Shown piece after piece: positions 2,604-64,000 of a stretch of 64,000 nt of DNA. The position numbers were made by a program, and so were the translations under genes. Below the pieces are notes generated by a model that saw nothing but the letters and a program-made list of their open reading frames with translations, did no database searches and had not been told where the DNA came from. The DNA comes from Octopus bimaculoides (taxonomy: Eukaryota): positions 21,224,698 to 21,288,697 of the forward strand of contig NC_068988.1 in NCBI RefSeq assembly GCF_001194135.2. The letters are read 5' to 3'. Position 1 is the stretch's first letter. Every line of letters starts with the position of its first letter.

Positions 2604-2757
2604 CCTGCAGGCGTTACGAGAAGAGTTTCTGGAGTTCCATACCAGCAGTAAAGAGCTTGAAGAGGAGATGGATACCACAATAAAACACCTAGATAAAGAG
2701 AAAAAAGACTTTACTGCAGTAAACAGTCGCTTACAAGAAGAAGTAGAATCATTAAAG
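2604..2757 (+). CDS. nudE: nudE (NDE1/NDEL1-like) internal exon, N-terminal coiled coil
   Basis: ttctgcag| acceptor and AAG|gtaggt donor; phase 2 to 0; 154 nt. Encodes (S)LQALREEFLEFHTSSKELEEEMDTTIKHLDKEKKDFTAVNSRLQEEVESLK, matching NDEL1 [24 protein letters not shown]...NQRLKYEVEALK. Confidence 0.95.
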
Positions 2758-2895
2758 GTAGGTTGTTTATTGAGTTATATTTTCCACAATCATCTCAGTA
2801 ACGTGTACCAGTGCCCTGCATGTTATCTTTTGTAAGACTTCATTGTGAAATATTGATTTCATCCATTTAGCTACAAGCTTATTGGGGGTGGTATC

Positions 2896-3650
2896 TGTTG
2901 TATGAGGGAACTGTAATGAGGGAGTGAGGAATAAGAGATGGTTCACCTGCCTTCTTGTCGTTCATCCAGTTGTACTAAGTCCCAAATTTGCACCCTGCCC
3001 ATTGCACCTAATGTAAGCAGCTGCTACTACCAGTCCCGCTAGCTTGCTCCACACACACACGTCTGTTTGTGGCGAGTGCCCCAAGGCAAAAGCAGACAGT
3101 GCTGGTTTTCCTCCTTCACTTCCTCTCTCGGCCTCCCTGTTCTGGTCAGGTCCCTTGACTGTTGACCTCACAGCCCTTTCCTTCTGGCTCATCTCATACC
3201 CACATACTCCCCACCCACCCTCGATCTCAAAGATCACCTCCTCACTTTACTCCATGTCAAAATCTACCATCCACCCATATAGACGCCTCACACGCTGTGA
3301 TCTCTGTAGGGAGGGAGGCTTGTTCTCTTCCTCTCTTCCACCTTTATCGTCCGACAAAGTAACAATTCTGCAAACATCCAAAATAACTTGTTATATGAGG
3401 GAACTGTAATGCAGGGAAATAAGAGATGGTTCACCTACCTTCTCATTGTCGGCCATCCACCTGTACTAAGTCCAAAGCTTGCACTCTGCCTGTTGCACCT
3501 AATGTAAGCAGCTGCTACTACCAATCCATCTAGCTTGCTCCACACGCATCTGTTTGCAGTGAGTGCCTTAAGGTGAAAGAGGATGACCCTGGTCTTCCTT
3601 CTCTCACTTCCTCTCTCGCCCCCTTCCTTCCGGCTCATCTCATCCTCACA
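2896..3650 (-). mobile_element. Miniature non-autonomous LTR retrotransposon (TRIM-like)
   Basis: Direct repeats 2896-3204 and 3389-3650, each starting TGT and ending ACA; 184-bp non-coding core; GTATC 5-bp TSD at 2891-2895 and 3651-3655; G-rich PPT-like tract (minus strand GGGTGGGTGGGGAGTA) abutting the 3204 LTR. Confidence 0.8.
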
Positions 3651-5063
3651 GTATCATTATTAACTTAAGCCCTTTACTCCTTATGGTGCATAGGGCATCA
3701 GTAAATTTTCTCCAACTTTCTTGGCTCTGGGCTATCTTTCCTCTTCCAGGTCTTGTTGGTTCTGAATTATCATTGACGGCTATGTAACTTGCTGTTTTCT
3801 AGGTAGGGAGCATTCTCCCCTACCCAAACTCACTTTTACCTTTGGGTCCATATTAGTCAGGCTTTTATCTTTTGACCTGTCCAGCATGGGAAGCCTTACC
3901 AGGAATTTGCACTCTGCTGGCATAGCTCATTTGAGGCACACAACCTGTCACACTGCAACAAGTACTCGACCATGTGGTGATACATTGTGATAGTGTCATT
4001 ACCACCATCATTTTATGTCTGTTTTCCGTTTGATGCTAGCAGGGTTGGACATGTTTGTCCCAGCAGCATCTCACCAACTTGCTGCAGTTGCTCATGATAT
4101 CACCTGATAGTAGTAAACATGAGTCACCATCACGCCAACAGTGTCTTTTGTTTCCAATCTTCTGTGAAAAGATATCTAGCCAAGGGAAAGTATTACCTCG
4201 CTTGAACATAGGTAAAGGTTGGTGACAAGAAGGTTATGTGACCATAGAAAATCCACCTCATCAAATTGTTTGACCTATATGAGTATGGGTAGGTGGACAT
4301 TAAAATGTGTATTTCAGAAAGAATATCCAGTTTACTTAAATATCACAAGATACTTATTATATTTGTATCATTAATAACTTCATCATTGAAATTGTGAAAG
4401 GGAATAGTTTCTAATATAACTTTGAACAGCTCCACTGAGACAAATGCTCTATATTTTCCATTTGCTTCATGTGTATTGAAATAATTGCTTCTTTTGTCAA
4501 GAAGAATGTTTTAAGGATTCATTATCTTCTTGGTATGCTAAATTCCTCAAATACGAAATGAGAGCTGGTCTGTTTGTCATGAGCCCAAAGACTCATAAGG
4601 CTGGAGTTTAACCATGGTTTCCATGGCATATGAATCTCTGAATGGGACACTGGTCTGTCACATGGTTGACTTCCCAGCTATCACTGAAACTGGGTGGACT
4701 GGAGCACCATGAAATGAAGTGTTTTGCTCAAGAACACAATTCATCACCAGGTCCCGGAATGGAAACCACACCTTCACTGAAATGAGAGCTTTGTTTATTT
4801 ATGTAGGTCTGTCACTGTCTGTCTGTCTATACCTGCTTGTATGCCTGTCACTATGTATTTTTTCTGCTGGTATGAGATGGATGTGCTTGTCATGCAACAT
4901 TGTTGTCACTAGTCTCTGTTAGGTCCAATGTTTACAGATCTGTTTTCCCTGTATCTTCTCACATTCTGTATTAGTATTTTCTACTGTTAGTGTACAACTG
5001 TACTTTGTTTAGTCCAGCACTCTAATTGAGGCCATTCACGTCATATTTGAACCATCTGAAGTG

Positions 5064-6219: not shown

Positions 6220-6662
6220 TGCTTGCGAAGACCTGTTGGGGCAAGCGAAATCGTGATGGCACCACCATTCGAGTGTGATCGTTACCAGCGTTGCCTTCCT
6301 GGCACTTGTGCCGCAGCTTCGCGTTCCTGGCACTTGTGCTGGTGGCACGTGAAAAGTCATTTGAGCGAGATCATTGCCAGTGCCGCTGGACTGGGTCCTG
6401 TGCAGGTGGCACATAAAATACACCATTTTGAGCGTGGCCATTGCCAGTACCACCTGACTGGCCTTCGTGCCGGTGGCACGTAAAAGCATCCACTACACTC
6501 TCAGAGTGGTTGGCGTTAGGAAGGGCATCCAGCTGTAGAAACTCTGCCAGATCAGATTGGAGCCTAGTGTAGCCATCTGGTTTCACCAGTCCTCAGTCAA
6601 ATCGTCCAACCCATGCTAGCATGGAAGGCAGACGTTAAACGATGATGATGATGATGATGATT
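6220..6662 (+). mobile_element. RTE-type 3' end repeat with (GAT)n tail (repeat family B)
   Basis: Shared core ...ggttggcgttaggaagggcatccagctgtagaaactctgcc...catggaaagcggacgttaaacgatgatgat. Other copies at about 1-203(+), 8108-8358(+), 19120-19345(-), 19535-19715(+), 27487-27847(+), 35805-36200(-), 56065-56218(-) and 57600-57770(-). Confidence 0.85.
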
Positions 6663-9600
6663 TACTATTCTATGACACTATAACAAAAGCAATCTCAAGC
6701 AGGATGGCATCATAGCGATTAAAAGTAATATTGTGATTATCTATACATTTTGCATTGATGGGAATGGGATGGCAGTGTGTGATTTGATTTGGCTACTATT
6801 TCTAGCAAAATGAACAACCACATAGAGGCTTCCTCGCAGGCTTGTGTCTTTGGGATGTTGTGATATTGATAGTATTGTTTTACATAGCTGCTCAGGCAAA
6901 AACTCGAAGGAAATAGAGAACACTCTTTGTCAAGACGTTTGTTCTAAAAATAAATATAAGGTTTCTTTTGTGTTGTGTTTCAGACAAACAGGAAATCTTT
7001 TTCACTCGTTTTTGCATTTAAAATTTTATGTGTATGTATAATCAATGTAACAAGGAATATATAGCATATAGAATTGTGAATATAAAATGATTCTATGCAG
7101 GTCAACAAGATTTAGGAGGTTTAATTAAAACAGTAGCAAAAAACGAAATCACTTTACTCAAGGTTATCTTTGTTAGACTCGACTCTGGCAGATACACTGA
7201 TAATTTGGTTTTATTCTGAAAGCAGAATCATACTTTGTCAAAAGAGAGTAGTTGTAGGGTTAAGAAGTTTGCTTTTCAGTCGTATGGTCTTGGGTTCAGT
7301 CCCACTGTCTGGCTTGCATAACTGTCATTTACTATTGGTCTGAGCCGACCTAAGCCTTCGAAGTAGATTTAATAGACGGAAACTGTAAAAAACTTTGAAC
7401 TTTGTGTGTTTATGCATGAGCATTTGTGTGTACTCTTGTAACAAATACCACCACATAATGGTTGTAAATGTGCATCACCCTCACACAAGCGATGTTGTTC
7501 ATTTACAGTCTTCTGTGGAAGAACATGTCTGGCCATGGGAAATATTTACCTTGCTGGGGAACATGTGAGGGTTGGCAACAGGAAGGGCATCTGGCTGTAG
7601 AAAAATCTGCCTTGGCTAATTCAGTCTGACCCAGGCAAGCATTGGAAAAGGAGGTATTAAATGATGATGATTTAGTAGATAGAATCTATCTTGTCACTGT
7701 AGATGAACAGTTTACAATCTGATTTTCATCATTTCTCTTTCTGATTTTACCTGATCTGTTTCCAGATAGGAAGAATTTGGTATACAGAGCTGTGTAGTGC
7801 CAAAGATGAGATTCAGACAAATGGATTTGCAGCTAAGGGTCACCATTTTGGCAGTGATGTCCAAAATCATGTCTCCTTAATCTGGGGGCACTAGTGACTT
7901 TTGTACAGTTAATCTGAACAAGTCTAATTCATTTTTTGATGAGATTTATGTTTGTTTGCAAAGTAAACTTTTAGGAAAGCTTAAAATTGTATTAATTTTT
8001 ACTTTTTACTTGTTTCACTCTTTGGATTGCAGTCATTCTGGTGCACTGCCTTGAAAAATTTTTAGGCGATTGAATCAATCACACTTTTTCTTTTTTTAAG
8101 TCTAACAGGTGGCACGTAAAATACACCATTTTGAGCGTGGCCGTTGCCAGAACCGCCTGACTGGCCTTTGTGCCGGTGGCACGTAAAAGCACCCACTACA
8201 CTCTCGAAGTGGTTGGCGTTAGGAAGGGCATCTAGCTGTGGAAACTCTGCCAAATCAGATTGGAGCCTGGTGTAGCCATCTGGTTTACCAGTCCTCAGTC
8301 AAATCGTCCAACCCATGCTAGCATGGAAAGCGGACGTTATATGACGATGATGATGATGAATACTTATTCCCTTGATCACTATTATTAAATTGTCATGTTA
8401 TGGAAACATAAACAAACCAACACCAGTTGTCGTGTGAGGTAACAAACACAGGCACAAAGGTGTATGTGCACACACACACACACACACACATGTGATGGAT
8501 TTCCAAACTGTCTGCTTCTTAAATTCACTCTCAAGCCATTGGTTGATCTGGGACAATTTGCCCAAAGTGCCATGCAGTGAAACTGAACTTGAAACCACAT
8601 GGTTGCAAAGCAAGCTTCTTAACCACACATCCATGTCCACACCTACCTATTGCTTCATAAACGTATCCAGCTATAATAAATATATTAGCATTTCTTAAAT
8701 TCAAAGTTGTCTTACTTATTGCAAGTGTTGTTCAGCTTCGGGTCAGCACCGATTAAGTAAACCTAAAATCGACTTCCCAAGTATGTCCATCCTGTTGTTA
8801 TATCATGGATTACTGTTGTCCCAGTGTTATGTATCAAAATAGGTGGTTTTGATACATACAGAGTAAAATGTGGAGGACTGGAAAGTCTAAGTTGATAACT
8901 TTGAATGTTCTGACATGTTCTTAATGTTTGGAGTGTAAATTCTGTAGTTAAAGATTTGCACACTGGTACTGCTCCACAACTTTCTCTGTCAACAGATCAA
9001 TGTTGCGCTGCCACTTTTCTCAATTAGTCTTATCAGTTTAAAGTCTTCACTAACAAGTATGTCGCAGGACTCTTGGCTGGTCAAACTTCTTTCTGCACGA
9101 TAAATTCAAGGTGTTAGTAAAACGTGACTGCATGACCTATATTGTTGTTGTCAACGTCTCAATTGTCTATCAATTGGTCTCTTCTAAACTGAACTGTGTT
9201 GCAAGGAAAATATAGCAACTATTTATATCGAGGAAAAGTGACTAAAGATCTGGGAGGTATTTTATCTAAAAATAGAATATTCTTGTTTAAAACTGCTACT
9301 AAATATATCTGTTGGCAAAGATTTAAGGAATTCCTATAGCTTCAGTTATTGGTCATTTACTATGTATTTTTGGGTTGCTTGCACATTCCCTTTTAGAAGT
9401 GAAAAGTCTTAATTTCATTCCATTGGTTTGGCACAGACAACTAGTTTTCTATCTTCTACATTGTCATTTGACCACCCCTGTGCAACGACTTAAGGTTTCT
9501 TTTTTTAAATAATCCTCTAGAGCTGTTATTAGCTAATAGTTGAAGTTGTACTTTATCCTGTTTCAACCCTAATTGAGCATACCTGTGATCACAGGCATTC

Positions 9601-10575
9601 CAACTTGACCATCCTGTCTGATTAGGAATATCTTGGACCATATATTATCTCAGTTGTCCTTCCAATTCTAAAATGGTGAGTGTGATTTGGGGGGAAGATT
9701 TGACTGCTATGTTTAGAAACCTAGTGACTATGCAGATACTCTCTTGTTCAGTTCTTTACTTTGTTTCAAATGGAAAGTAAAAATAGCATTTATTGTATAT
9801 TTCTCAGCTGTAGTTATAGAAAAAAATTTCTTAATAATTTTGGTCACAGGGAGATATTTTTACTTGTTTATAAAATACATAATTTCCTCTGAACGTATGT
9901 ACCACATGTCTTTTTCTCATACTTACATGAGTTAAATAGATCATGAAACACTTTATAGTGTGAACTTTGCATATTTTGCTGTGTTCACAGTATTAGTGAG
10001 TCTCCTCTAACCTGTAGTCATTTTTCATTCAGCAGCATGGGTGTGGTTAAGAAGCTTGCTTCCCACCCTCTTGGTTCTGGGTTTAGCCCCCTGCATGGTA
10101 CCTTGGGCAAGTGTTTTGTATTACAGTCCTAGTTTGACCAAATTCTTGAGTGGATTCTGTAGACAAAAACTTAAAGAACCCTATGATAAAATATCTGTAT
10201 GCCTCTGTGTGCATTTGTGATTAGGTGTTTCCTTGTCTTGACATTGTGATTGTTGTAGACAAGTGCCACCGTCATACAAGCAGGGTTTCATGAAAATATG
10301 TTCAATCATAGGAAAATATTATCTCACTTGGAAACAGGTGACGGATGGCAATAAGAAAGGCACCTGGCTGTAGAAACTCTTGCTCTCAGCATATTATCTC
10401 TGTTGTGCAATATAAAGTTTACATTTCCTTGCACGTGCACTCACACACCTTCACGTGTGCATGCACACACACACACTCACATTCACAAGCTCAAATGCAC
10501 ATGCTCACTTTTGCATGCAGGCACAGTGCACACACGCAGGCACACACACATATGCACACACTCACGCAATGTACG

Positions 10576-10980
10576 CACTCACATGCGCACTTACACTCAC
10601 ATGCGCACTTACACTCACATGCGCACTTACACTCACATGCCCACTTACACTCACATGCCCACTTACACTCACATGCCCACTTACACTCACATGCCCACTT
10701 ACACTCACATGCCCACTTACACTCACATGCCCACTTACACTCACATGCCCACTTACNNNNNNNNNNNNNNNNNNNNNNNNNNNNNNNNNNNNNNNNNNNN
10801 NNNNNNNNNNNNNNNNNNNNNNNNNNNNNNNNNNNNNNNNNNNNNNNNNNNNNNGCCCACTTACACTCACATGCCCACTTACACTCACATGCCCACTTAC
10901 ACTCACATGCCCACTTACACTCACATGCCCACTTACACTCACATGCCCACTTACACTCACATGCCCACTTACACTCACAT
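10576..10980. repeat. 18-bp minisatellite (gcccacttacactcacat)n
   Basis: Tandem units on both sides of the N gap 10757-10853; the first three units read gcgcac. Confidence 0.97.
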
Positions 10981-12334
10981 GTTCACACACTCTCACTCTT
11001 CCACGCACTCACACACATGCACACAATCACAGACACACTCACATGCGCACAAGCGGCTATATCATCATCTTTATTGATTTAGCATCCATTTACTCAGGCT
11101 GGTAAAGCTTGGAAGGTAGTTTGCAATATAGCACCGATAAGGTACAACCCCCTATCTTGAAGACGTCTTTCCTTAGCCTTTTTTTCCAACCCCCTACTGA
11201 CAGCACACTGTTTTAACTTGGTGTTCATTAATGCACAGCATACATGCATGCTAGGATGCAATTTTTTTAATAGGTGTACTTCCTTACTAATAGCTTTTTC
11301 TCATTACTGATATTTCTTTGGGTGTCTCCAGAAATACATGATTTTGCTTCCTTACAAATGAGGAATGTAGCTTTTTCAGGATGCATTAGACAACAAGTTC
11401 CTATGAATTGTTGTTGGTAGTAGTAGTAATAGTAGTGCTAATTTATGATGACTACACCTAGATTATTTTGTTAGCGCTTAGCTCTATAAAACATTTAGCC
11501 AGAGAGGGGGAGAGAGAGAGAGAGGGAGACCTAGCAAAAATCCATATTAAATGTTTGTTTAATGACTCACTTGCATCAGATAGTTACTGGAGAATGTCTC
11601 TTTATGACTAGGCATTGATGAGTTAGTTGCTTGCTAGCCTTTTCAATATCAATCTTCCTGAGATTACCTATTTGTTGTTTGTTTCAAAATGTTCATATGT
11701 AATTTCAACCTTCCGTCATAATTATTGATGAAGGCAGGCGTGTGGCTCAGTGGCTAGGATGTTTCACTCTTCAGTGACACGGGCACACACAACCTGGGTA
11801 GCTGACTCTGTGTTCTAGGGCTACAGACATTGATGCCCAGGGGTTGTTGATGATGATCATAATTTTATGCTGGAACCTCTTGTGTTCCAATCATTATCTT
11901 AATTAAAATGTTACTTTTGTAAATCCTACCATGCTTTTGATTATTTTCAAAATTAATTGAAACGTCAGTGATGTATTTCATTAGAAATAAATTAATGGAA
12001 AGATTTGTCGAAATTTTGCAACAAAATACAAAGTGATTAAAATTAATATTTCTCCATTTGACTTTCATGTTCAGTTTAAAAGGCCTTATTAGCGAGCAAG
12101 ATCTATTTTCATCCTTCAGTCCTTTTGTATTCCATGGATGAAAAGCAGCTTAATTAATTCTAAGTACAAAAATATGATTAATAATTGTCATTATTATGAT
12201 ATAAAGAAAAGAAAAATTTTTGACATTTGTATTGATAGACAAATAAATAACATTGTTAATTAGTTTGTATTATCTTTGTTTACTAATGAAACAGTAAAAT
12301 CTCATTATTTGGTTCTAGAATAATTAAAATAACC

Positions 12335-12883: not shown

Positions 12884-13032
12884 CGTAAATTAGAGTCCTT
12901 GCAAACTGCACGTCACTACGAGGTATCGAAACTACAAACAGATCTTTGTGAAGTTACGGCTTGGAAGGAAGAACACCAGAAATACATAATTCGGATAGAG
13001 CAACTTAATGATGATTTGGAAAGACAGAACAG
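12884..13032 (+). CDS. nudE: nudE internal exon, coiled coil (LIS1-binding region)
   Basis: Poly-T tract then ctgcag| acceptor; AG|gtaggt donor; phase 0 to 2; 149 nt. Encodes RKLESLQTARHYEVSKLQTDLCEVTAWKEEHQKYIIRIEQLNDDLERQNR (cf. NDEL1 KYVRELEQANDDLERAKR). Not in the ORF track. Confidence 0.95.
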
Positions 13033-13222
13033 GTAGGTTTTGTATTATACTCTGTGTGTGTGTGTGCACAAATGCATGGATACAGAGTTCACTTCGTAAC
13101 CACCATATGTTGTAGGATCTATCCTATTGTGTGGCACCTTGAGCAAGTTTCTTCTGTTATAGCTTTGTGCTGACCAGTGCCTTGTGAGTGAAATTGGCCG
13201 ACAGAAACTGCATAAAAGCCCG

Positions 13223-14329: not shown

Positions 14330-14636
14330 TAACATTTACGCTGGGACTCTTCATCACAATATGAGCATGGCTGTTGCCAGTACCGCCTGATGATCACAAT
14401 ATGTCTTGAAATTTTAGTGTTTGGATGTGTGGATTTCCTCTGAATGCTGTTTTCTGCATCACATAAGAATGATTTTATTTTTATGAGCTGATTTACTTTT
14501 CTTTACTTGTATTTCTACTTGGTGAGAGAATCCCATTGTTGACAGCAGGGGTGATAACTCTGCACTTTTTCCACCATATTCTTATTCTGATACCTATATT
14601 TTCAGAATACCCCTCCTTCATAGCTGATTAGGTAAT

Positions 14637-15023
14637 TGTTGTTGTTGGCACTCGTCGCTTACAACGTCGAGGGTTCCAGTTGATCCAATCAACGGAACAG
14701 CCTGCTCGTGAAATTAATGTGCAAGTGGCTGAGTCCTCCACAGACACATGTACCCTTAAGGTAGTTCTTGGGGATATCCAGCGTGACACAGTGAGACAAG
14801 GCTGGCCCTTTGAAATACAGGTACAACAGAAACAGGAAGAAAGAGTGAGAGAAAGTTGTGGTGAAAGAGTACAGCAGGGTTCGTCACCATCCCCTGCCGG
14901 AGCCTCGTGGAGCTTTAGGTGTTTTCGCTCAATAAACACTTACAACGCCCGGTCTGAGAATCGAAACCGCGATCCTATGACCGTGAGTCCGCTGCCTTAA
15001 CCACTGGGCCATTGCGCCTCCAC
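14637..15023 (-). mobile_element. tRNA-derived SINE, family A
   Basis: Reverse complement of the family A body; TSD ctgat(t/c)aggtaat. Confidence 0.92.
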
Positions 15024-15733
15024 TGATCAGGTAATATGTTACAGAGAAAAGAAAATGCTATATATTTACTATTCAAAGTACAGAATAGGATGAATAATTA
15101 AATTATAGTTGGCCAACCTATATCTTTGGGCTAGACAGGCTGAGATCAGTAGCATGTCTTATTGACACAATGTCCAGCACTCATGAAATACCCATGTGCT
15201 GTGTATTTAACAAAATTGACCTGCTTTCAGTTGGCTATATCTCTTTCCATCTACATCCACTTTCAATAACTTTCTCTGCTTTAAACCTCCTTTAATTTTT
15301 TGGCTTAGTGGTCACTGAGATCAAGATAATTCTTAGTTGACACTTAATTTCCCCACAACCATTATCACGACTGGTAACCACTCCTCACTCATATTTCTGG
15401 AGTAAATATTATCTTTTCCAACTTACTACATCATGTAAAATTTTGAGTTAATCATAGATTATCCTGTTCTGATTAGCCATTGCTTATAAATCTGCTGATA
15501 GTTAATAATTATATTAGTCAGCTGTGTTTGTGTTTCATTTGTAGGTGAGTAGGTTTTAATCTTGGTTAATCCAACACAAATGTCTATTTACTAGCTTATT
15601 TCTAATTGAGTTCATTAACATACACGTGTATGTGTGTATGCATGCATCTAGCTATCCTTTCGTACAAATGTACCTTGCTCTTGATCAAAGAAAAATTGTA
15701 TATTGTGAACCTAAACCATTGTTTACTATAATA

Positions 15734-17093
15734 TTAGGTTGGCAACTAAGTTCACGCGGTTTTTTTAAAATTTAAATTTTTTAAAAGGTTTAATAAAAAA
15801 TAACAACTAATTAATCAATAATGTATTCACCCTTGTTGTTTACAACTTCTTCTCAACGTTCAACAAGATTTTCAATACCTTGTTGGTAGAAATCACCCGA
15901 TTTCGACTCAGAAAATTGATCCAGCCAAGCTCTCAATTCTGCATCAGTATTGAATGAAACTCCGCGCATAACATTNNNNNNNNNNNNNNNNNNNNNNNNN
16001 NNNNNNNNNNNNNNNNNNNNNNNNNNNNNNNNNNNNNNNNNNNNNNNNNNNACATAACATTTGAAAGAGATCGAAAGAGGGGGAAATCCGTTAGTGCCAA
16101 ATCAGGAGAGTACGGCAGGTGTGGCAGCACTTCCCAGCCATGCGTTTAAATGGCTTCCTTGGTCATATTGGCGATATGAGGGTGGGCGTTGTTGTGCAGC
16201 AGAAGAACAACTCCATGCTGACGATTAGGTCTTTTCTCTTGAATAGCCATGTTGAGTTGTTCCATCTGTTGAACATAGAGTTCCTTGTTGACTGTTTGGT
16301 TCCGATCAAGCAATTTGTGATGGATGATCCCTTCCCAGTCCCATCATATGCACAACATTGTTTTACGCGGATGATGATCTTGTTTCACGCATGGTGTCGC
16401 TTGTTTACCGGGGCTAAGCCTTTCCTTACGCTGTTTCATATTGATGTACAGGCACCATTTTTCGTCGCCAGAAACGATTCGGTAAAGAAATCATTGCTTG
16501 TGTCCATGAGTTGAGCGGTAACGAGCAAGCAAACCAGCGGAGATTGTGGCTCGTTGATTTTTGTTGTTGTCACTTAAAGCATGCGGAGCCCATGCTCCAT
16601 ACTTCTGAACCTTTCCCATCGAGTGAAGATGCTTCTCTATATCAGTGTGGGAGCATTCCATTTTCTCTGCCAGTTCCCTTGTCGTCTGACAAGAATTTCC
16701 GTGCAAAAGTTGATTTAATTGCTCTTCATCGAACTCAACTTGACGGCCAGAATGAGGTGCGTCATGGAGGTCAGAATTTCCATTTTTGAACTTGGCATAC
16801 CAGTTACGAGCGGTTCTTTCAGCTATGGTACCCTCTTGGTACACATCACAAATGTTGTGAGCAAATTTTGCAGCCTTGGAACCTTGATTAAAAGCAAAAG
16901 GAATGTGTTGAAAATGCTCGTTTGTTTTAACTTGACATTCCATTTTAATGATCTGAAAATAAACAAAAATTAACTTAGAAAAAAAAATCAAAAAAACAAA
17001 ATAGATCCCCAAATGATTCAAAAATAGAATTCTCGAAAAAAAATAGATTCCAAAATTCAAAAAAAACTGCAGGAACTTAGTTACCAACCCCAA
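15734..17093 (-). mobile_element. Tc1/mariner DNA transposon, near full length
   Basis: TIRs ttaggttggcaactaagttc... and (reverse complement) ttggggttggtaactaagttc...; TA TSDs at 15732-15733 and 17094-17095. Confidence 0.95.
15811..16943 (-). pseudogene. Mariner (DD34D-type) transposase, inactivated
   Basis: MECQVKTNEHF...WAPHAL...GDEKW...YSPDLA...KGEYIID*. Three in-frame stops; the second catalytic Asp reads Asn (HNNAHPH); spans the N gap 15976-16051. Confidence 0.93.
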
Positions 17094-17456
17094 TATATTG
17101 CAAACATTCCTAAATGTTATTAGATAGAAACATGGCTGTGTGAAAAACTTTGCTTGACTACCCCATGGTTTTGGGTTAGGTCCCAGGACCCGGTGAGTAA
17201 AATTTGTAGATGAAAACTGTATTGAAGCACTCTTCAATGTGTGTGTGAGTGAATATTGTATACATTCATACACACAGATGACTAATATATAATATATATG
17301 TAATTGACGATGACTTCCTATATAATATTTTTATTCCAGGAAGTAACAAAGTGTCTAACTTTCATGAATAACTTTTTTAGTTTTTGAACTTCTGATCACC
17401 TCGTTACCTGTGTTTGTTTATTTGACTGCAACTTTTTTTGTTTTGTCTGTTTACAG

Positions 17457-17502
17457 AATTGCTGCATTGTCATTGACAGATTTTGAAAAGAATCTCAACA
17501 TG
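17457..17502 (+). CDS. nudE: nudE small internal exon
   Basis: ttacag| acceptor and ATG|gtaagt donor; phase 2 to 0; 46 nt. Encodes (R)IAALSLTDFEKNLNM (cf. ATIVSLEDFEQRLNQ). Confidence 0.92.
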
Positions 17503-18484: not shown

Positions 18485-20071
18485 TTATTTATTTATATAT
18501 ATATATGTGTGTATGTGTGTGTATACTGTGGTTTATTTCTTTAATGAAAAACCCTTGAAGCCGATGCCTCAGTATGGCTGCAGTCTGATTTCATGAAACA
18601 AAAGCTGAAAGATAGATCCAAATTTGGCTGTTAAAGTGCTTTTATAACATTAATCCTTCTCTCCTGGAGTTTGTTGTTAATATAGCTCTCAGGTCAGCTA
18701 TGTCTAAACAGATGCAGGACTCAACACCTCCCAGAGTCAAACAGTCAAGCCATAATAATGCAGATATGGTGTCTGGTTTGTCACCTGTAACTGAACTTGA
18801 GTCTTTGTTTGGATATACTGGAATACAGACTGAAAAAATGGTATGAGCTAGGTGTCGAGAGATAGACAGATAGATAAATGGAGAGGGAGGAAGACTAAAA
18901 TTAGATGGGAAAAAGTGAGCGGTGGGTGAATAAGATCTCATGGTGCTTCACCTCGTAGATAAGATAACACAAAATTTTACTGTATTACAGGATTATTTGT
19001 GAAGGCACATGACCTAGTGCATAACATGTTGCACTCACAAATGTAAGATTATGGTTTCAGTACCCAGTCTAAGTAGCATGTTGTATTCTTGAAGAAAATG
19101 CTTCATTTCATGTTGCTCCAGTCGACCTTCATCATCATCATCATCATCATCATCCTTTAACATCTGTTTTCCATGCTGGCATGGGTTGGGCTGTTTGACC
19201 AGAACTGGTAAGCCTGGTGAGCTGTACAAGGTTCTAGTCTGATTTGGCTTGGTTTCTGCAGCTGGATACCCTTCCTAATGCCAGCCACTTTACAGTGTGT
19301 GCTGGGTACTTTTAATGTGGCACTGGCACAGCACTCCTGCAGGTCAGTCTTCTTTACCAGGGGATGTGGCCATAACACTTCAGCTGTAATTGAGTTCTAG
19401 CAACAGCTGGGAAGTTAACTGTGTGATGGACTGGTGTCCTGTTCAGAGGGTTATCTCAGTCACTTATACACCATAGAATCCCAGTTAGTCTCCCACTATG
19501 AGACCTTGGGCTCATGACAGACTTTACAGCATTAATTCGGGTGCTGGTGCCCTGTAAATAGCACTCAGTCCACTCTGTAAGGTGGTTGGCATTAGGAAGG
19601 GCATCCAACTGCAAAAAACATGACAGTGAAGCTTGGTGCAGTCTTCTAGCTTGCTAGCTCCTATTAAACCATCCAACCCATGCCAGCATGGAAAATAGAC
19701 ATTAAATGATGATGATAGTAATGATTTTAATTGTTGCTATAATCTCTTTGTTCTAAAATTTAAGCTTTAGAATATTCATTGAAAGGTAGTGGTTTGTTTT
19801 TTTGTTTTTTATATAAACAAGGATTGGTTGGCACACACCAAAATAATTGTTTTTTCTAGCTGCTATTCTTTAGTCTAGTGTAGACTGGGTCCAGTAATTC
19901 AGGGCAACAGTAGTACAACATAATATTTAGTCTGCTTCCTTTTGAGTAATTGGTCAATACTGAGTGTTTTCAGTCATCCTGACTCATCAGCTGTGATTTT
20001 GATGATGGAAATATATATATATATATTTGAGTGTTTTATATGTTATATACTAAAATGTTCTTTGTCTGAAG

Positions 20072-20162
20072 GCTTTGGAGAGAAATGTTTTCCTAGAGAA
20101 TGAACTCGATGGCAAAGAAATTCTCAGAGAATCTATTCAGAGATTAAAAGATGAAGCAAGAG
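20072..20162 (+). CDS. nudE: nudE internal exon, end of coiled coil
   Basis: gtctgaag| acceptor and AGAG|gtaaag donor; phase 0 to 1; 91 nt. Encodes [30 protein letters not shown] (cf. [30 protein letters not shown]). Confidence 0.95.
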
Positions 20163-20189
20163 GTAAAGATATTTTGCTGTTGTTGTTGT

Positions 20190-20370
20190 TACTACTACTA
20201 CTACTACCCACTACTACTACCACCACCACCACCACCACTACTACTACTACTACCACTACTACTACTACTACCACTACTACTACTACTACTACCACTACTA
20301 CTACCACCACCACTACCACTACCACTACTACTACTAATACTACCACCACCACCACCACCACCACTACTAC
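20190..20370. repeat. Mixed (CTA)/(CCA) trinucleotide microsatellite
   Basis: Directly visible; starts about 27 nt after the 20162 donor. Confidence 0.97.
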
Positions 20371-21203
20371 TTCAAACTGCCTGGTCATAAACATTTACTG
20401 TGTCTTGCATACATGTCTCTAATAAAAGTCATAATTAAGGCATTCTGAGAAAATAGCGTATTTAAAAATTTTGTGTTTGTCAATTAGAAGAGTTGCAGTT
20501 CTTTTCTGCAGTTTGCAGACAAATATTTTTGTCAAATGTCGGCAAGTATCAGCAACTAATCAACCAGATACCAGTGAACCTGAGCAACACAACCACAAAT
20601 TTTACTGTGGCAGCTGGCTGCAGCCCACCATTATTTGCAGCAGCACCTACAGGAAAGCTACTTCTTTGCAAGAGCTGCACTTAGAAAAGTGCCTAAGGTT
20701 TGGAAAGTGGTCAAAATGAACTTGAGGATGTGTTCAAAAAGAGGACAGAAAAGTAATCTTAACTGTGTCCCTGGAGGTAATGGGAAATGCTGAGCATTGC
20801 AACAATAAGATATTGTTGCATAGGTATGGAAAGTTATTGTAAAAAAAGACCTATATATGCCCAATTATTTGAAGGCAACATGGAAAAATTTACCTTTGTC
20901 AATTGTGAGCTATTCCATCTCCCTGGTTAAAAGTGAGACATTTTATCCTCATTCCATCTTATATGGGTTGCTGGATGACAAAGATGAGGGCTGTAGATGT
21001 GCAGTCAGAAACAAATGCCCAACCTGATTGAGCTAGCAAATGACACTTAGGTGAATAGAGAAAGCTCACATGCCACACATGTGCTGCTAGAAACCACATA
21101 AGACCATTCAGACACATTGAAGGGCAAAATCGACTTCAGCAGCAGCAACTACATTACTAACAATAGCAGCCGACATCTTGGAAACAATTGAATCTGTCAC
21201 TGC

Positions 21204-26594: not shown

Positions 26595-26665
26595 GCTCTG
26601 TCATATCCTCGGCTGCCCGAATTTCAGCCCTTTCCATTGTAGGAGATTTGTTGCAGAAAGTTGGT
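26595..26665 (+). CDS. nudE: nudE internal exon, C-terminal helix (dynein/CENP-F-binding region)
   Basis: ttgcag| acceptor and GGT|gtaagt donor; phase 1 to 0; 71 nt. Encodes (G)SVISSAARISALSIVGDLLQKVG (cf. SARISALNIVGDLLRKVG). Confidence 0.95.
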
Positions 26666-26812: not shown

Positions 26813-29030
26813 TTATTATTATTATGATGAAAATCTGCTTTGATTCACATCTTAGCTAGTTGCCTCGATTAGCTCGCCTTTCTCTCATAGTGTTCCTGTA
26901 ATCTGCAGACATTTCATTGACATGTTTAATGTTTTTATTTTTATTTTTGGCTTTTATTCTCTGGAAAGCTATGCAAGTATTGTTCTTTTTAATGCTGTTT
27001 TCCAAGAGAAAACTTAAACCAGCGCATGCCTTATTAATTCCGAGATGACTTCACTGAAATGCCATTCTCTGATTCGGTGTAGATATTTCAACTTTGCTAA
27101 GTTGCAATATAGTTGAAGATTGTTTTCTTCTCTGTGTTTCTAATGAGTCTGTATTCTTGGATATTTTTGAGAAATGTGAGACCTAACGGAAGTTGAATTA
27201 GTAGCAATGTTTTATTAATTGCTTATATTATGTTATGGGTTAATTGTTCAACTAAATACATATTCTGCCATCCACCCCTTGGCAAGACTAGTTTTATTTT
27301 AAAGTTGATTAATTAAATGTTAAGACAGACATCTAATTATTTTGGTATTGCAGTTCAGCATTATTTTTTTTTATAACATTTGAAAAAAACTTTTAATAGA
27401 ATTAGAGAATAGTGTAACATTTGAACCTGTGCACAAATATTGAGAACCTGTTTGTTGTTTTGGAAGTATTTGTTTTCCTTCATCAGTGCTCAGCATCGCC
27501 TTTCTGGCACTTGTGCCCGCGGCATGTGTAAGGACTTTCGAGCGAGATCGTTGCCAGTGCCCCTGGACTGGCTCTTGTGCGGGTGACACATAAAGTACAC
27601 CATTTTGAGCGTGGCCATTGCCAGTATCGCCTGACTGGCCTTTGTGCTGGTGGCACGTAAAAGCTCCCTCTACACTCTCTGAGTGGTTGGCATTAGGAAA
27701 GGCATCCAGCTGTAGAAACTCTGCCAAATCAGATTAGAGCCTGGTGTAGCCATCTGGTTTCACCAGTCCTCAGTCAAATCGTCCAACCCATGCTAGCATG
27801 GAAAGCGGACGTTAAACGATGACGATGACGATGATGATGATGATGATCAGAACAACCAAATAATGCTCAAATAAGTAAGGGGGGTTTCTATGTGGATGCT
27901 TAACATGCTAGAAATAACAGCTACACCTCTCAAACTGCACTCTGTTTTTAAAAGAAAATGTAAGATCAAATTGGATAATGTGTTGTCCTGTCTATACTGT
28001 CTAGTAAAAAGATAGGATGGCTATAGCCAGAATACTTTTGACCATATGTTTACTTAACTAGGTCTGCCTTGGAGCTAAACAACAACAGCTCACTAATGTA
28101 AGTAGTGCTGTATCATTATAATTCCATTCTACCATGCACCATGTTATCAGCTAATAAGGTAGCACATGAAATGGGAAGATATTAAGGCAGGCAAAGTTTA
28201 GCACCCAAAAGACACAACACTTTATCTGTGGTGAGATAAGATAAGCTATTTGAAGCTGTTTCGCTTTTCCTTTCATAAATATTCTCTTCTACATCCATTG
28301 TTTCTGTTTCATTATGAGTTGAACAACAGTAATGTCTATAAGTGTTTGATTACAAGAAGAGAAAATGAGGACTTGAATCAGTGCCTAAAAGACCAACCTT
28401 GTGTTATTTTGAGATTAATTCCACTCTGGCTTTCCTTATTAAGAGGAGGGTGGAGGATTTGTCGCATCATTAGAGCACTGGACAAAATGCCTTGAAGCAT
28501 TTAGTTATGGTCCTATACATTCTGAGTTCTAATCTCTTGGAGACTGACTTTGCCTCTCATCCTACAGGATTTAAAAAAATAAGTACTAGAGAAATTCTGG
28601 AGATGATGTAACTGACCATTTCCTTTCCCTCGCTCCAACTTTCTGGCCATGTGCCTATGTAAGAAATGATTATTAAGATGTAAAAAAAAAAAGTTGTGTT
28701 ATTCTATAATAAAATAGAATAGGGTTGTTAAAAGAAATCATTAAAATTTTATGGATGGAAAAATATATATTTTTTTAATTTCCTTTTTGAAACTCCATGT
28801 ACTACATGACCCCTTGCTCCCAAATAAATGTGAAATGAATATTTGTTTTATTATTATCAACATCCCTGGATTTGGATTAATTATAATTATGAACATGGAA
28901 AGTATGAAAGATCTGACAGATGAAATATTGCTGTCGTAAAAAGAAAAGTAGCATCCTTTGAATGTCTTCATCTTGGTCTTTATACAGAATTACAAAGAAT
29001 TGTTTGAAATGTTCAGAGCCTTTTTCAGTT

Positions 29031-29063: not shown

Positions 29064-30302
29064 CATGCTGAGAGAGAGAGAGTTTCTATATTATTTCTGG
29101 TTGAAGTATGTAGTCTAGTAAATATGTCTGGCGGCTAGAATAATTAACTCCTGCTTGGAGGTTTCATGTTGCTGACTTCTTATGAATGTAATTATATCAG
29201 TGAGTATTCATCAAGCATCCACTAGCAGACATTTGCTGCTGTTTGAAGTAACTGGTATGAAATGTGAGGAGGGACAGGCATGGTTGTGTTGTCAAGAAGC
29301 TTGCTTTTTAACCACATGGTTTTGGATTCCACTGTGGCTTCTTGGACATATCATAAGTGTCATCTGCTATAAATTCTAAGCCAAACAAAGCCATGCGAGT
29401 GGATTTGGTTGATAGAAACTGAAAGAATCCTGTCTCAATTCCTGGTCTGGGCTGCATGTTGTGTTCTTGAGCAAGACACTTATTTCATGTTGTTCCAGTT
29501 CACTCAGCTGTAGAAATTAGTTGTGATGTCACTGGTGCCAAACTGTGTCGGCCTTTCCTTTGGATAACATTGGTCGTGTGGAGAGGAGAGGTTGGTATGC
29601 ATGGGCGAATGCTGGTCTTCCATAAACAACCTTGCCTGAACTTGTGCCTCAGAGGGTAACTTTCTAAGTACAATCCCATATTCATTCATGACCGAATGGG
29701 CTCTTTACCCTTTTATTTCCTTACTTTGACATCTGTGATAGTTGTAAATGATTGTCACTGTTACACAAGCAGTATCATTGACTTCCAATATTCTGCAAAA
29801 ACATGTTTGGTCATGGGGAAATATTACCTTACTTGGAAACCGGTAAGAGTTGGTGACAGGAAGGACATCTAACCATGAAAATCAACCTCGATAGAAAAAT
29901 AAATTCTACCTGATCCATGCAAAAATGAAAATGCATTTGTTAAAATGATAAATGAATGATAAACTTTGATTCTCTTGTTATCATATTTTCTTTCATGTGC
30001 ACACATTTGGTTATATGCCTTATTCTACATTCTATTATCCAGTTTTATGTTTAGTTATTAACTGTATGTATTAATGGATGAGAGGAGAAAAAAGGTTACG
30101 GCTTGATGCTAATCTTAAGGGCTCAGCTATGCTGGTGGCCATCATTTAGGGGAGTTGTAAAAATATCTGAAACGTGTTTTTCATGCATAAAGATGCTGGA
30201 AATACAATTGAAAAGACAATCCTTAAACAGCAATTCCACTATGGGTGGCACTGAATGTTACAAAAGACATTGAATTATACAGTCTTAGTACATTGTCTGA
30301 AA

Positions 30303-30661
30303 GTGGAGGCGCAATGGCCCAGTGGTTAAGGCAGCAGACTTGCGGTCATAGGATCGCGGTTTCGATTCCCAGAGTGGGCGTTGTGAGTGTTTATTGAGCG
30401 AAAACACCTAAAGCTCCACGAGGCTCCAGCAAGAGATGGTGGCGAACCCTGCTGTACTCTTTCACCACGACTTTCTCTCACTTTTTCTTCCTGTTTCTTT
30501 TGTGCCTGTAATTCAAAGGGTCAGCCTTGTCACACTGTGTCATGCTGAATATCCCTGAGAACTACGTTAAGGGTACATGTGTCTGTGGATTGCTTCATGA
30601 GCAGGCTGTTCTGTTGATTGGATCGACTGGAACCCTCGATGTCGTAAGCGATGCAGTGCCA
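30303..30661 (+). mobile_element. tRNA-derived SINE, family A
   Basis: Same body; TSD acattgtctgaaa at 30290-30302 and 30662-30674. Confidence 0.92.
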
Positions 30662-31639
30662 ACATTGTCTGAAAAAAAAAGGACAAGATGAACAGAACTG
30701 GAACCGTTTTGATCTCAAGTCTGCACCATCTGATTAGACACAGAAATAAACAACACATATATGCACATTCATATTTCATCCTAGCTAACTAAGAATGACA
30801 AGAGATACTTTTCATAGGCTCTAAATGTTATTGATGTAAGCCTCTCTCATTCTGTTTAATCTTTTATCAGCTTAAACCAAAATGAGAAGGTGATGGTGAA
30901 GTATAGGTATCAGTTGTGGCCTCACCTGTGAAGAAAAGCTATGGTATTTTGATTTGTATAAATAGACATTTAATCAGTTTCTAGACANNNNNNNNNNTCA
31001 AAGAACTACCAACAATTGAAGGATATTAATAAGTAGTGTCTGCAAATGTCCTTTATTGTGAGGAAAACTTTAGTAATTGAGCTATTAACTGCTTCCATGT
31101 ATATCTTGCTGTCGCAATAAATGATTATTTTTTGACCAAACAAGGCTAAACCTTGAGATAGTTGGTAAAATGCATGCCGGTATATTACTTGGTCCATACT
31201 CCATAGACCCTAGAAATATGAAGGCCTAAGTTATGCCCACAGGGGGCTAAACATAGAGGAGACAAACAAGGACAGACAAAGGGATTAAGTCGATTACATT
31301 GACCTCCAGTGCGTAACTGGTACTTATTTAATCGACCCTGAAAGAATTGAAGGCAAAATCGATCTTGGTGAAATTTGAACTCAGAACATAAAAACAGACG
31401 AAATACCGCTAGGCATTTTGCCTGGTATGCTAGTGATTCTGCCAGCTCGCCTCCCTATGAAGGCTGAAGTTAGCTCTGAATGTAGAGTATCAAGATTAAA
31501 TAGACTGAAGTATTTAGTGTAATACTCTTTGTCAAGTGAAAAACAAATACTTATAAGTTGTTAGCAATTATTTTCTTTTAGTGAAATACTGTTTACACTG
31601 CTGTCATTCTTGTTCTTGGTTAATTAATCATTTTTATAT

Positions 31640-32200
31640 TATCATTATTATTGAGTGAGAGAGCAATGCATGCCATCAAAGTTATACTGGGGTACAAATA
31701 TACAAAGCCCATCATGACTAACCATCTGATAATGGCACACCAGGCACATGCATCATAACCACATGTACGTGACACAATCTCATATCAAGATAAACAGCAC
31801 ATGACCTTGCGGGTGGGGGCCCAGTAAGAATTTTCTTGAGGTCAAGTAACCTATCCTGCTCAAAAGGTTCCTGAATAAGGGTGGTTTAAGATGAAAATGT
31901 TTCTGTATTCACCACAAGGGCAAAAGATGAGAGGACATTACATAGATCATTATTATCATTGGTTTTAGCATCCACTTTTCCATGTTTGCATGAGTCAGGT
32001 GGAATTCATTAAGGCAGATTTTCTATGGCTAGATGCTCATCCTACTTTCAGAGGTGAATTGATGCTCTCCCATTACTCCTGCTCGTGATCAGAAATGCAC
32101 ATATTGTCAGCCACTAAAGGACCATGCTCAGCTGGTTAAGGTCAAGCAACTCTGTGGTATTGAGCAGAATATTCAGTGTAGCCCATCTTGTATACCATGA
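31640..32200 (-). mobile_element. Retroposon with (TAA)n tail, interrupted by a templated insertion at 31901-32048
   Basis: Minus-strand end ...gcatgcattgctctctcactcaataataat; the flanks atgtttc|cagaggtgaatt rejoin across the insert, as in my recollection of this repeat. Confidence 0.55.
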
Positions 32201-34784: not shown

Positions 34785-35172
34785 TTGTTGTTGTTGTTGG
34801 CACTCCGTCGCTTACGACGTCGAGGGTTCCAGTTGATCCGATCAATGGAACAGCCTGCTCGTGAAATTAACGTGCAAGTGGCTGAGCACTCCACAGACAC
34901 GTGTACCCTTAACGCAGTTCTCGGGGATATTCAGCGTGACACAGTGTGACAAGGCTGACCCTTTGAATTACAGGCACAACAGAAACAGGAAGTAAGAGTG
35001 AGAGAAAGTTGAGGTGAAAGAGTACAGCAGGGTTCGCCACCATCCCTTGCCGGAGCCTCGTGGAGCTTTAGGTGTTTTTGCTCAATAAACACTCACAACG
35101 CCCAGTCTGGGAATCGAAACCGCGATCCTATGACCACGAGTCCGCTGCCCAAACCACTGGGCCATTGCTCCT
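34785..35172 (-). mobile_element. tRNA-derived SINE, family A
   Basis: Reverse complement of the family A body with a (TTG)n tail. Confidence 0.9.
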
Positions 35173-44526: not shown

Positions 44527-44919
44527 GTGGAGGCGCAATGGCCCAGTGGTTAGGGCAGCGGACTCGCTGTCATAGGATCGCGGCTTCGATTCCCAGACCG
44601 GGCGTTGTGAGTGTTTATTGAGCGAAAATACCTAAAGCTCCACGAGGCTCCGGCAGGGGGTGGTGGCGAACCCTGCTGTACTCTTCCACCACAACTTTCT
44701 CTCACTCTTACTTCCTGTTTCTGTTGTACCTGTAATTCAAAGGGTCAGCCTAGTCGCACTGTATTACGCTGAATAGCCCCGAGAACTATGTTAAGGGTAC
44801 ACATGTCTGTGGAATGCTCAGCCACTTGCACATTAATTTCACGAGCAGGCTGTTCTGTTGATCGGAACAACTGGAACCCTCGACGTCGTAAGCGACGGAG
44901 TGCCAACAACAACAACAAC
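44527..44919 (+). mobile_element. tRNA-derived SINE, family A ((CAA)n tail)
   Basis: A box TGGCCCAGTGG and B box GCTTCGATTCCC; TSD attcattgttt at 44516-44526 and 44920-44930. Confidence 0.92.
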
Positions 44920-45878: not shown

Positions 45879-46258
45879 GTGGAGGTGCAATGGCCCACTG
45901 GTTAGGGCAGTGGACTCGTGGTCATAGGATCGCGGTTTCGATTCCCAGACCGGGCGTTGTAAGTGTTTATTGAGCGAAAACACCTAAAGCTCCATGAGGC
46001 TCTGGCAGGGGATGGTGGCGAACCCTGCTGTACTCTTTCACCTCAACTTTCTCTCACTCTTACTTCCTGTTTCTGTTGTGCCTGTAATTCAAAGGGTCAG
46101 CCTTGTCACACTGTGTCATGCTGAATATCCCTGAGAACTGCGTTAAGGGGTACATGTGTCTGTGGAGTGCTCAGCCACTTGCACGTTAATCTCACTAGCT
46201 GGCTGTTCCGTTGATCAGATCAACTGGAACCCTCTACGTCGTAAGCGACGGAGTGCCA
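45879..46258 (+). mobile_element. tRNA-derived SINE, family A
   Basis: Same body as 44527; TSD acactgtcacat at 45867-45878 and 46259-46270. Confidence 0.92.
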
Positions 46259-47259: not shown

Positions 47260-47534
47260 AAGACATTTAACTCTCATTAGCTTCTTTTGCCCTAACTATA
47301 AATAGGAACAAACAAGCAGCCACTGAGTAGCTGGTTTGAACGGCTGAAAGTACTGGGTTCAAATTCTTCTTTGGGCCTGGGTTAGGCAATGGTAGACATT
47401 TCCTATGTATGTGTGTATCCCCTACCCACTGATTACTACTTGAAATGTAGGCACTTCAGTGGTGCCCTAATGGCAAATGAGAAAGAGAATTAAGTTACTA
47501 ACTACTACTACTACTACATTGCTGCTGCTATTGT

Positions 47535-63960: not shown

Positions 63961-64000
<40 letters not shown>

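What the first reader, a model, noticed from the sequence alone, without database searches (positions are those of the whole stretch)
2891..3655. 755-bp TRIM-like miniature LTR retrotransposon 139 bp downstream of a nudE exon
Seen in sequence: two diverged direct repeats (2896-3204, 309 bp; 3389-3650, 262 bp; roughly 80% identical by eye, with an extra ~40 bp in the first). Both run TGT...ACA, are separated by 184 non-coding bp, and are flanked by an exact GTATC duplication. A G-rich tract abuts one LTR on the minus strand, giving the orientation; after the other LTR is only a weak PBS-like AGTTATTTTGGATG. Established: this is the layout of terminal-repeat retrotransposons in miniature, common in plants and reported in only a few animal groups. 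Inference: a non-autonomous LTR family in a genome otherwise dominated by SINEs and LINEs; I do not recall one described in cephalopods. LTR divergence implies an old insertion.
Basis: partly seen in the sequence, partly recalled or inferred. Interest (0 to 1): 0.7.

Follow-up and report, generated by a model that had tools for sequence, protein, structure and literature searches.

The report
Old miniature LTR retrotransposon copy
A 755-bp, non-coding, decayed copy of a small LTR-type jumping gene sits in an intron of a nudE-like gene; the structure is real but ordinary, and whether it represents a new family could not be tested here.

Summary
Two direct repeats (2896-3204 and 3389-3650) are homologous (BLAST E 1e-57). 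They are 87% identical at aligned bases and about 80% counting gaps. A 184-bp spacer separates them, and exact GTATC copies flank the pair.

New evidence supports integrase-mediated insertion of the whole unit:
- Homology alone fixes the boundaries, and the 5-bp duplication sits exactly at them.
- Only the outer flanks match.
- Each repeat runs TGT...ACA with an imperfect terminal inverted repeat (GTATGAG/CTCATAC).
- A purine tract ends 2 nt from one repeat on the minus strand.
- The element is 45-54% GC, against 30-36% in the intron around and beyond it.
- It has no Pfam, tRNA, 5S or hammerhead content.

The "PBS-like" motif is not a canonical primer-binding site.

No second copy lies in the 64-kb window. 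The public collections on hand hold no DNA of this organism: abundant SINEs used as a positive control also found nothing. Family status, autonomous partner, empty site and prior cataloguing therefore stay untested. An in-situ internal deletion of a full-length element cannot be excluded.

Verdict: a genuine LTR-type relic with TRIM-like layout.

The parts
2604..2757 (+). Exon of the host nudE/NDEL1-like gene. The element lies in the intron that follows; the next exon is at about 12884-13033.
   Evidence: Translation is LQALREEF...EVESLK. tblastn with a recalled human NDEL1 finds four colinear exons. Pfam NUDE_C scores 32.8 bits against a cut-off of 30.9 on the joined exons.
2891..2895 (.). 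Target-site duplication, copy 1 (GTATC)
   Evidence: Read directly from the sequence.
2896..3204 (-). 3' LTR in the inferred minus orientation (309 bp). It runs TGT...ACA and carries a 42-bp segment at about 3136-3177 that the other LTR lacks.
   Evidence: The terminal inverted repeat GTATGAG (2900-2906) / CTCATAC (3193-3199) is.
3207..3222 (-). Polypurine-like tract GAGGGTGGGTGGGGAG, ending 2 nt before the 3' LTR
   Evidence: Fifteen-mers with at least 13 purines make up 1.5-2% of the window but 11% of this strand of the element.
3205..3388 (-). Internal domain (184 bp), non-coding
   Evidence: No Pfam hit in overlapping ORFs. No Rfam family. No significant copy elsewhere in the window.
3368..3380 (-). 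It starts 8 nt after the 5' LTR and is not a canonical PBS. Nine nt of it (TGTTTGCAG) are complementary to 5' LTR positions 92-100.
   Evidence: chance expectation of such a 9-mer is about 0.02.
3389..3650 (-). 5' LTR in the inferred minus orientation (262 bp), TGT...ACA
3651..3655 (.). Target-site duplication, copy 2 (GTATC)

Best explanation
[quoted passage not shown] It lies antisense in an intron of a nudE-like gene.

Shown:
- two homologous direct repeats;
- TG..CA ends with a short terminal inverted repeat;
- an exact 5-bp target-site duplication around the whole unit;
- a purine tract next to one repeat;
- no coding capacity.

Inferred mechanism:
- An RNA copy running from R in one LTR to R in the other was packaged and reverse-transcribed by the Gag-Pol of an autonomous partner. 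Ty3/Gypsy or Copia is the likely partner, because these are the LTR groups common in molluscs.
- Plus-strand synthesis was primed at the purine tract.
- The partner's integrase joined the TG..CA ends to a 5-bp staggered cut at GTATC.
- The two LTRs were identical at insertion and have since drifted to K2P 0.14. That is about 20 million years if the octopus calibration of PMC13282606 applies.
- The copy is now inert.

I put about 0.8 on an integrase-mediated insertion of an LTR-type element. I put about 0.5 on the narrower claim that it transposed as a miniature belonging to a multi-copy family.
For: - Repeat homology has E 1e-57. Aligned bases are 87.4% identical with a 3:1 transition:transversion ratio, as expected for neutral decay.
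- Homology-defined boundaries coincide with an exact 5-bp flank match. Its chance probability is 0.0016, and 0 of 44 control repeat pairs show one.
- The inner flanks (TACTC and TAACT) do not match their partners, so the two repeats were not inserted separately.
- The ends are TGT/ACA. A perfect 7-nt inverted repeat lies 4-5 nt from the two ends of the left LTR.
- The purine tract GAGGGTGGGTGGGGAG ends 2 nt from the LTR on the minus strand. No equivalent exists in the other orientation.
- The element is 45-54% GC, against 30-36% in the intron on its left and beyond about 4200; the 3656-4200 stretch on its right is also GC-rich, 43-46%.
- No homology to the internal domain continues after the second repeat, and TRF finds no tandem array.
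- ORFs in the element have no Pfam domain.
- The layout and sizes match the published TRIM definition and biv-TRIM (PMC6934838).
Against: - There is no canonical PBS. The first TGG is 8 nt after the LTR, and the implied tRNA end would be atypical.
- The LTRs (262 and 309 bp) are longer than the classical TRIM range of 100-250 bp.
- No other copy or solo LTR lies in the 64-kb window.
- No external copy could be sought, so mobility as a miniature rests on a single locus.
- The minus strand of the element is purine-rich overall (60%). This weakens the specificity of the purine tract.
- No promoter or poly(A) signal was recognised in the LTRs.
Confidence: 0.5

Rival explanations
1. A full-length autonomous LTR retrotransposon (Ty3/Gypsy or Copia) inserted here. 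It later lost almost all of its interior by an in-situ deletion, leaving LTR, 184 bp, LTR. It would then not be a miniature that transposes as such.
For: This predicts every feature seen: the duplication, TG..CA ends, the purine tract and diverged LTRs. The lack of a recognisable PBS could mean the deletion removed or damaged it. The LTRs are longer than classical TRIM repeats.
Against: Decay of LTR elements usually yields solo LTRs. A deletion that spares both LTRs and the purine tract and leaves under 200 bp is less common than copies of an amplified non-autonomous family (general knowledge, not tested). No coding remnant is present.
Confidence: 0.25
2. A local segmental duplication unrelated to transposition. 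A stretch of about 300 bp was copied 493 bp downstream by replication slippage or repair, and the flank match is coincidence.
For: Only one locus is known and there is no other copy in the window. No PBS is present.
Against: - The exact 5-bp flank match sits at homology-defined boundaries (P about 0.0016).
- The ends are TG..CA with a terminal inverted repeat.
- GC content is foreign to the intron.
- The sequence after the second repeat is not homologous to the spacer.
- No GTATC lies between the copies, as microhomology-mediated tandem duplication would leave.
Confidence: 0.08
3. Two independent insertions of one short interspersed repeat (a SINE or solo LTRs of one family), in the same orientation and 184 bp apart.
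For: The window is full of SINEs, several of them clustered in the same orientation.
Against: - Neither repeat has its own flanking duplication; only the outer flanks match.
- There is no tRNA, 5S or 7SL-like head and no simple-repeat or A-rich tail.
- Similarity to the SINE family with a (GAT)n tail is at chance level.
- No further copy is present among the many repeats of the window.
Confidence: 0.05
4. A partial tandem of a Penelope-like or retrozyme-type element, whose pseudo-LTRs arise from tandem insertion and usually carry hammerhead ribozymes.
For: Penelope-like elements are abundant in octopus genomes (PMC13282606). Tandem arrangement gives direct terminal repeats.
Against: No hammerhead family appears even at E <= 10. 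No CUGANGA core lies on either strand. The TG..CA ends and the precise 5-bp duplication point to an integrase rather than target-primed insertion.
Confidence: 0.03

Closest known systems
TRIMs (terminal-repeat retrotransposons in miniature; Witte et al. 2001, as defined in PMC6934838 and PMC10886601)
   Same: The element is under 1 kb and non-coding. It has two terminal direct repeats around a short internal domain, a purine tract next to the 3' repeat, TG..CA ends and a 5-bp target-site duplication.
   Different: The repeats are 262 and 309 bp, against the classical 100-250 bp. No tRNA-complementary PBS is recognisable. Only one decayed copy is known, so family status and mobility are unproven.
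biv-TRIM of bivalve molluscs (PMC6934838)
   Same: It comes from a mollusc and has a comparable layout: 202-218-bp repeats, a 77-80-bp internal domain and a short G-rich PPT (GGGGAGA). It also lacks an unambiguous canonical PBS.
   Different: The present internal domain and repeats are longer. biv-TRIM also occurs as solo repeats and tandem arrays in many species, none of which could be examined here.
Cassandra, Helenus and Ajax (TRIMs with a small-RNA gene in the LTR; PMC10886601)
   Same: They are short non-autonomous LTR elements. Helenus occurs in molluscs (bivalves).
   Different: Their LTRs carry a tRNA-like or 5S-like sequence, and none is detectable here. Animal Helenus makes 4-bp duplications; this element made 5 bp.
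Retrozymes and Penelope-like pseudo-LTR elements (PMC7761336)
   Same: They are small non-autonomous retroelements with direct terminal repeats.
   Different: They are defined by hammerhead ribozymes in the repeats, which are absent here.
Internally deleted Ty3/Gypsy or Copia elements (also LARDs/SMARTs)
   Same: They have LTR ends, a PPT and a duplication, and depend on Gag-Pol supplied in trans. Gypsy and Copia are the LTR groups found across molluscs, including cephalopods (PMC10294476).
   Different: No similarity to any autonomous element could be shown, because none is present in the window or in the accessible collections.

Membership tests
LTR retrotransposon (any) | Two long terminal direct repeats that were identical at insertion | tested here: met
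   The repeats are 309 and 262 bp with E 1e-57. Aligned bases are 87.4% identical and K2P is 0.14.
LTR retrotransposon (any) | LTR ends 5'-TG...CA-3' with a short terminal inverted repeat | tested here: met
   Both repeats run TGT...ACA. GTATGAG (2900-2906) and CTCATAC (3193-3199) are perfectly complementary in the left LTR and partly so in the right.
LTR retrotransposon (any) | A 4-6 bp target-site duplication flanking the whole element | tested here: met
   GTATC lies at 2891-2895 and 3651-3655, at boundaries defined by homology. Chance is 0.0016, and 0 of 44 control pairs match.
LTR retrotransposon (any) | Polypurine tract immediately upstream of the 3' LTR | tested here: met
   GAGGGTGGGTGGGGAG ends 2 nt before the LTR on the minus strand. 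Specificity is moderate, because this strand is purine-rich.
LTR retrotransposon (any) | Primer-binding site complementary to a tRNA 3' end, within a few nt of the 5' LTR | tested here: inconclusive
   No TGG lies within 0-5 nt of the LTR in either orientation. The first TGG is 8 nt downstream and is followed by AT-rich sequence. The window holds no tRNA and the organism's tRNA set is unavailable. The copy is also old enough for a PBS to have decayed.
TRIM | Total length under 1000 bp and no coding capacity | tested here: met
   The element is 755 bp. Its ORFs (121 aa or less) have no Pfam match.
TRIM | Terminal direct repeats of 100-250 bp (classical definition, PMC6934838) | tested here: not met
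   The repeats are 262 and 309 bp. They are slightly above the classical range. Whether later, wider definitions would admit them rests on my own recollection.
TRIM | A family of multiple dispersed copies (full elements, solo repeats) with independent duplications, mobilised in trans | not testable with these tools
   There is no other copy in the window. The DNA and protein collections on hand lack this organism: the SINE positive controls also failed.
Cassandra / Helenus / Ajax | A 5S rRNA-like or tRNA-like sequence inside the LTR | tested here: not met
   ARAGORN finds no tRNA. Rfam finds nothing at gathering scores or at E <= 10.
Retrozyme / Penelope-like pseudo-LTR element | Hammerhead ribozyme in the terminal repeats | tested here: not met
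   Rfam gives no hammerhead match at E <= 10. No CUGANGA core lies on either strand.
Tandem repeat / satellite | Head-to-tail units with homology continuing through the array | tested here: not met
   TRF reports no long-period array. The sequence after the second repeat is not homologous to the spacer.

The most novel reading that the evidence does not exclude
The copy is a relic of a previously uncatalogued TRIM-type family in a cephalopod genome. It would be the first such family in that class, missed by default LTR finders because the element is so short. It may prime reverse transcription without a tRNA: a 9-nt stretch near the start of the internal domain is complementary to the 5' LTR, as in self-priming Tf1/sushi-type elements.
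Probability: 0.2. Interest if true: 0.35.

Novelty: new member of a known kind. Interest (0 to 1): 0.2.

Why it matters
If a family exists, it would add a small non-autonomous LTR element to the repeat catalogue of a lineage whose genomes are described as dominated by SINEs, LINEs and DNA transposons. It would extend the known animal distribution of TRIMs beyond hymenopterans, cestodes and bivalves.

Such short elements fall below the default spacing limits of LTR finders, so they are easily missed. Dated insertions like this one can also serve as presence/absence markers between related species.

The copy lies 138 nt from a splice donor, antisense to the host gene. Nothing suggests a function. 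As a single decayed copy it is ordinary genomic debris.

Tried and rejected
1. Search for other copies, all empty:
- BLAST and nhmmer within the window.
- Exact 20-mer scans of metagenome and viral contigs.
- A six-frame translation of the element against the 5.8-billion protein set.

2. Controls showing that these negatives carry no information:
- A 22-mer from an abundant SINE gave one chance hit with no extended similarity.
- Twenty window ORFs are absent from the protein collection.
- A six-frame query of the two commonest SINE families found nothing.
- No close NudE ortholog is present.

3. Weak nhmmer hits of the LTR to the SINE family with a (GAT)n tail are at chance level by shuffling.

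4. A 34-nt similarity of the spacer to 17438-17471 suggested a mariner inverted repeat. The mariner's repeats lie elsewhere (15720-15773 and 17053-17106), so this is chance.

5. The sequence right of the element (3656-3995) was tested as a third LTR or as a diverged copy of the spacer. It is neither.

6. Small-RNA or ribozyme content of the LTRs was tested and none was found.

7. Literature:
- No paper in the held library pairs TRIMs with cephalopods.
- No paper prints k-mers of the LTR or of the SINEs.
- The supplement of the Octopus vulgaris repeat paper holds no sequence library.

Full report
**Observation.**
- The region contains two direct repeats, 2896-3204 (309 bp) and 3389-3650 (262 bp), found by the repeat finder, MAFFT and BLAST.
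- BLAST gives 80.2% identity over 243 columns (E 1e-57), plus 89% over the last 27 bp.
- A gap-aware global alignment gives 254 aligned positions and 87.4% identity. It has 24 transitions, 8 transversions and 8 indel events, one of them a 42-bp block present only in the left repeat. K2P is 0.14.
- Both repeats begin TGT and end ACA. They are 184 bp apart. GTATC precedes the first (2891-2895) and follows the second (3651-3655).
The "roughly 80%" figure includes gaps.

**Is it more than chance?**
- The repeat boundaries are set by homology alone, because the bases just outside each end differ between the copies. The duplication was therefore not used to place them.
- Two random 5-mers of this window are equal with probability 0.0016.
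- Of the four flanks, only the outer pair match. The inner flanks are TACTC and TAACT.
- As a control, I examined 44 other direct-repeat pairs of at least 100 bp in the window. None has a 5-bp outer-flank match, even allowing +/-3 bp at each end.
- The left repeat carries a perfect 7-nt inverted repeat (GTATGAG at 2900-2906, CTCATAC at 3193-3199) placed 4-5 nt from its two ends. With TGT/ACA this makes an imperfect terminal inverted repeat of about 11 nt, partly kept in the right repeat.
- The element is 45-54% GC, against 30-36% in the intron on its left and beyond about 4200.

**Context.**
- The element lies in an intron of a nudE/NDEL1-like gene on the plus strand.
- Exons lie at about 2604-2757, 12884-13033, 20069-20161 and 26597-26665.
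- Pfam NUDE_C scores above its cut-off on the joined exons.
- The first repeat starts 138 nt after the splice donor.

**Orientation and internal signals.**
- On the minus strand the internal domain ends in GAGGGTGGGTGGGGAG, 2 nt before the repeat at 2896-3204. That repeat is therefore the 3' LTR.
- Such purine-rich 15-mers make up 1.5-2% of the window but 11% of this strand of the element. The tract is therefore supportive rather than decisive. The plus orientation has no equivalent.
- No canonical primer-binding site exists in either orientation. On the minus strand the first TGG lies 8 nt after the 5' LTR. It would pair with a tRNA ending ...GCAAACAUCCA, which from my own knowledge is unlike cytosolic tRNAs.
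- The window has no tRNA gene to test against.
- Nine nt of that motif (TGTTTGCAG) are complementary to positions 92-100 of the 5' LTR. The chance expectation is about 0.02. This could hint at self-priming, but I treat it as a lead only.
- ORFs in the element have no Pfam domain.
- No Rfam family matches, whether tRNA, 5S or hammerhead, at gathering scores or at E <= 10. There is no CUGANGA hammerhead core.

**Rivals tested on the sequence.**
- Tandem duplication or satellite. TRF finds no long-period array. The sequence after the second repeat is not homologous to the spacer: the global colinear alignment scores worse than shuffles, and the only local similarity is weak and out of register.
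- A third degenerate LTR in 3656-3995. Similarity is at chance level.
- Two separate SINE insertions. The repeats have no individual duplications and no small-RNA head. The weak nhmmer hits to the SINE family with a (GAT)n tail are at chance level.
- A mariner end inside the spacer. This is rejected, because the neighbouring mariner's inverted repeats lie at 15720-15773 and 17053-17106.
- In-situ deletion. The sequence cannot separate a miniature that transposed as such from a full-length element that lost its interior in place.

**External evidence.**
- None could be obtained, and the negatives carry no information.
- The LTR 20-mer is absent from metagenome and viral contigs. A six-frame query of the element finds no protein at E <= 10.
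- The controls fail in the same way. A 22-mer conserved in an abundant SINE gives a single contig with no extended similarity. Twenty ORFs of the window are not in the protein collection. A six-frame query of the two commonest SINE families finds nothing. No close NudE ortholog is present.
- The collections on hand therefore hold no DNA of this organism or its close relatives.

**Literature.**
- TRIMs are defined as elements under 1 kb with 100-250-bp terminal direct repeats, a PBS, a PPT and a 5-bp duplication. In animals they are reported from ants, the honey bee, taeniid cestodes and bivalves (PMC6934838).
- The tRNA-bearing Helenus group occurs in six animal phyla, including bivalve molluscs (PMC10886601).
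- biv-TRIM likewise lacks an unambiguous PBS and has a short G-rich PPT.
- Gypsy and Copia occur across molluscs, whereas BEL, DIRS and Ngaro are nearly absent from cephalopods (PMC10294476).
- A 2026 repeat annotation of Octopus vulgaris used LTR_FINDER. It lists Ty3-like and "other LTR" families and places an LTR burst at JC 0.12, about 33 My (PMC13282606). Its scale is about 0.0036 substitutions per site per My. If that scale applies, K2P 0.14 between the LTRs dates this insertion to about 20 My.
- No paper in the held library links TRIMs with cephalopods.

**Conclusion.**
- The structure is genuine. It is best explained as an integrase-mediated insertion of an LTR-type retroelement, which I put at about 0.8.
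- The most likely form is a non-autonomous miniature mobilised in trans by a Gypsy or Copia partner (about 0.5). An in-situ internal deletion is the main rival (about 0.25).
- It meets most TRIM criteria. It fails the classical repeat-length range and shows no canonical PBS. The family criterion could not be tested.
- Even if confirmed it would be a new member of a known kind, in a phylum where TRIMs are already described. Interest is low.

Noticed in passing
window 15720-17273: A mariner-like DNA transposon. Its 54-nt imperfect terminal inverted repeats lie at 15720-15773 and 17053-17106. An ORF at 16491-17273 (-) carries the Mos1-type HTH_48 domain (E 4e-15). The ORF is truncated and an N gap (15976-16051) lies inside the element.
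   Followed up: partly
window 53021-53210 and 53931-54120: A 190-bp direct duplicate, 100% identical, 910 bp apart. It is part of a SINE-like family that also occurs at 48433-48763 and 63786-63964. It is either a very recent duplication or conversion, or an assembly artefact.
   Followed up: partly
window 14636-15023, 34785-35172, 44527-44918, 45879-46261, 46882-47261, 30302-30664 (family with a tRNA-like head); 6300-6661, 27486-27838, 35803-36156, 8106-8359 (family with a (GAT)n tail): Two abundant SINE families. The first has a tRNA-like head and copies 85-95% identical. The second ends in a (GAT)n tail. Both are far younger and more numerous than the LTR element. I used them as positive controls for the database searches.
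   Followed up: partly
window 3656-4250: The sequence right of the element is also GC-rich (43-46%) compared with the intron background. Positions 3996-4060 resemble the SINE-related family at 19.1-19.7 kb. Positions 3656-3995 are unidentified and unrelated to the LTRs or the spacer beyond chance.
   Followed up: partly
window ~3136-3177: The 42-bp segment found only in the left LTR ends in CCTCACAG, like the LTR terminus followed by the G of the duplication. GCC is repeated at its two edges. It is either a microhomology deletion in the right LTR or a small internal duplication in the left; no outgroup is available to decide.
   Followed up: no
window 31898-32048 and 33015-33165: A 151-bp inverted repeat, 98% identical, with one arm abutting the N gap at 33166-33611. 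It may be an assembly artefact.
   Followed up: no
window 10500-11010 and 20162-20420: An 18-bp-period minisatellite (reads as HAHLHS in one frame) interrupted by an N gap. A long ACT/ACC trinucleotide run starts immediately after the nudE exon donor at about 20162.
   Followed up: no
L001 2571-2592: The only metagenome contig with the SINE 22-mer (Ga0335074_10075439) shares nothing else with the window. It is a chance match and shows that the collection lacks this organism.
   Followed up: yes
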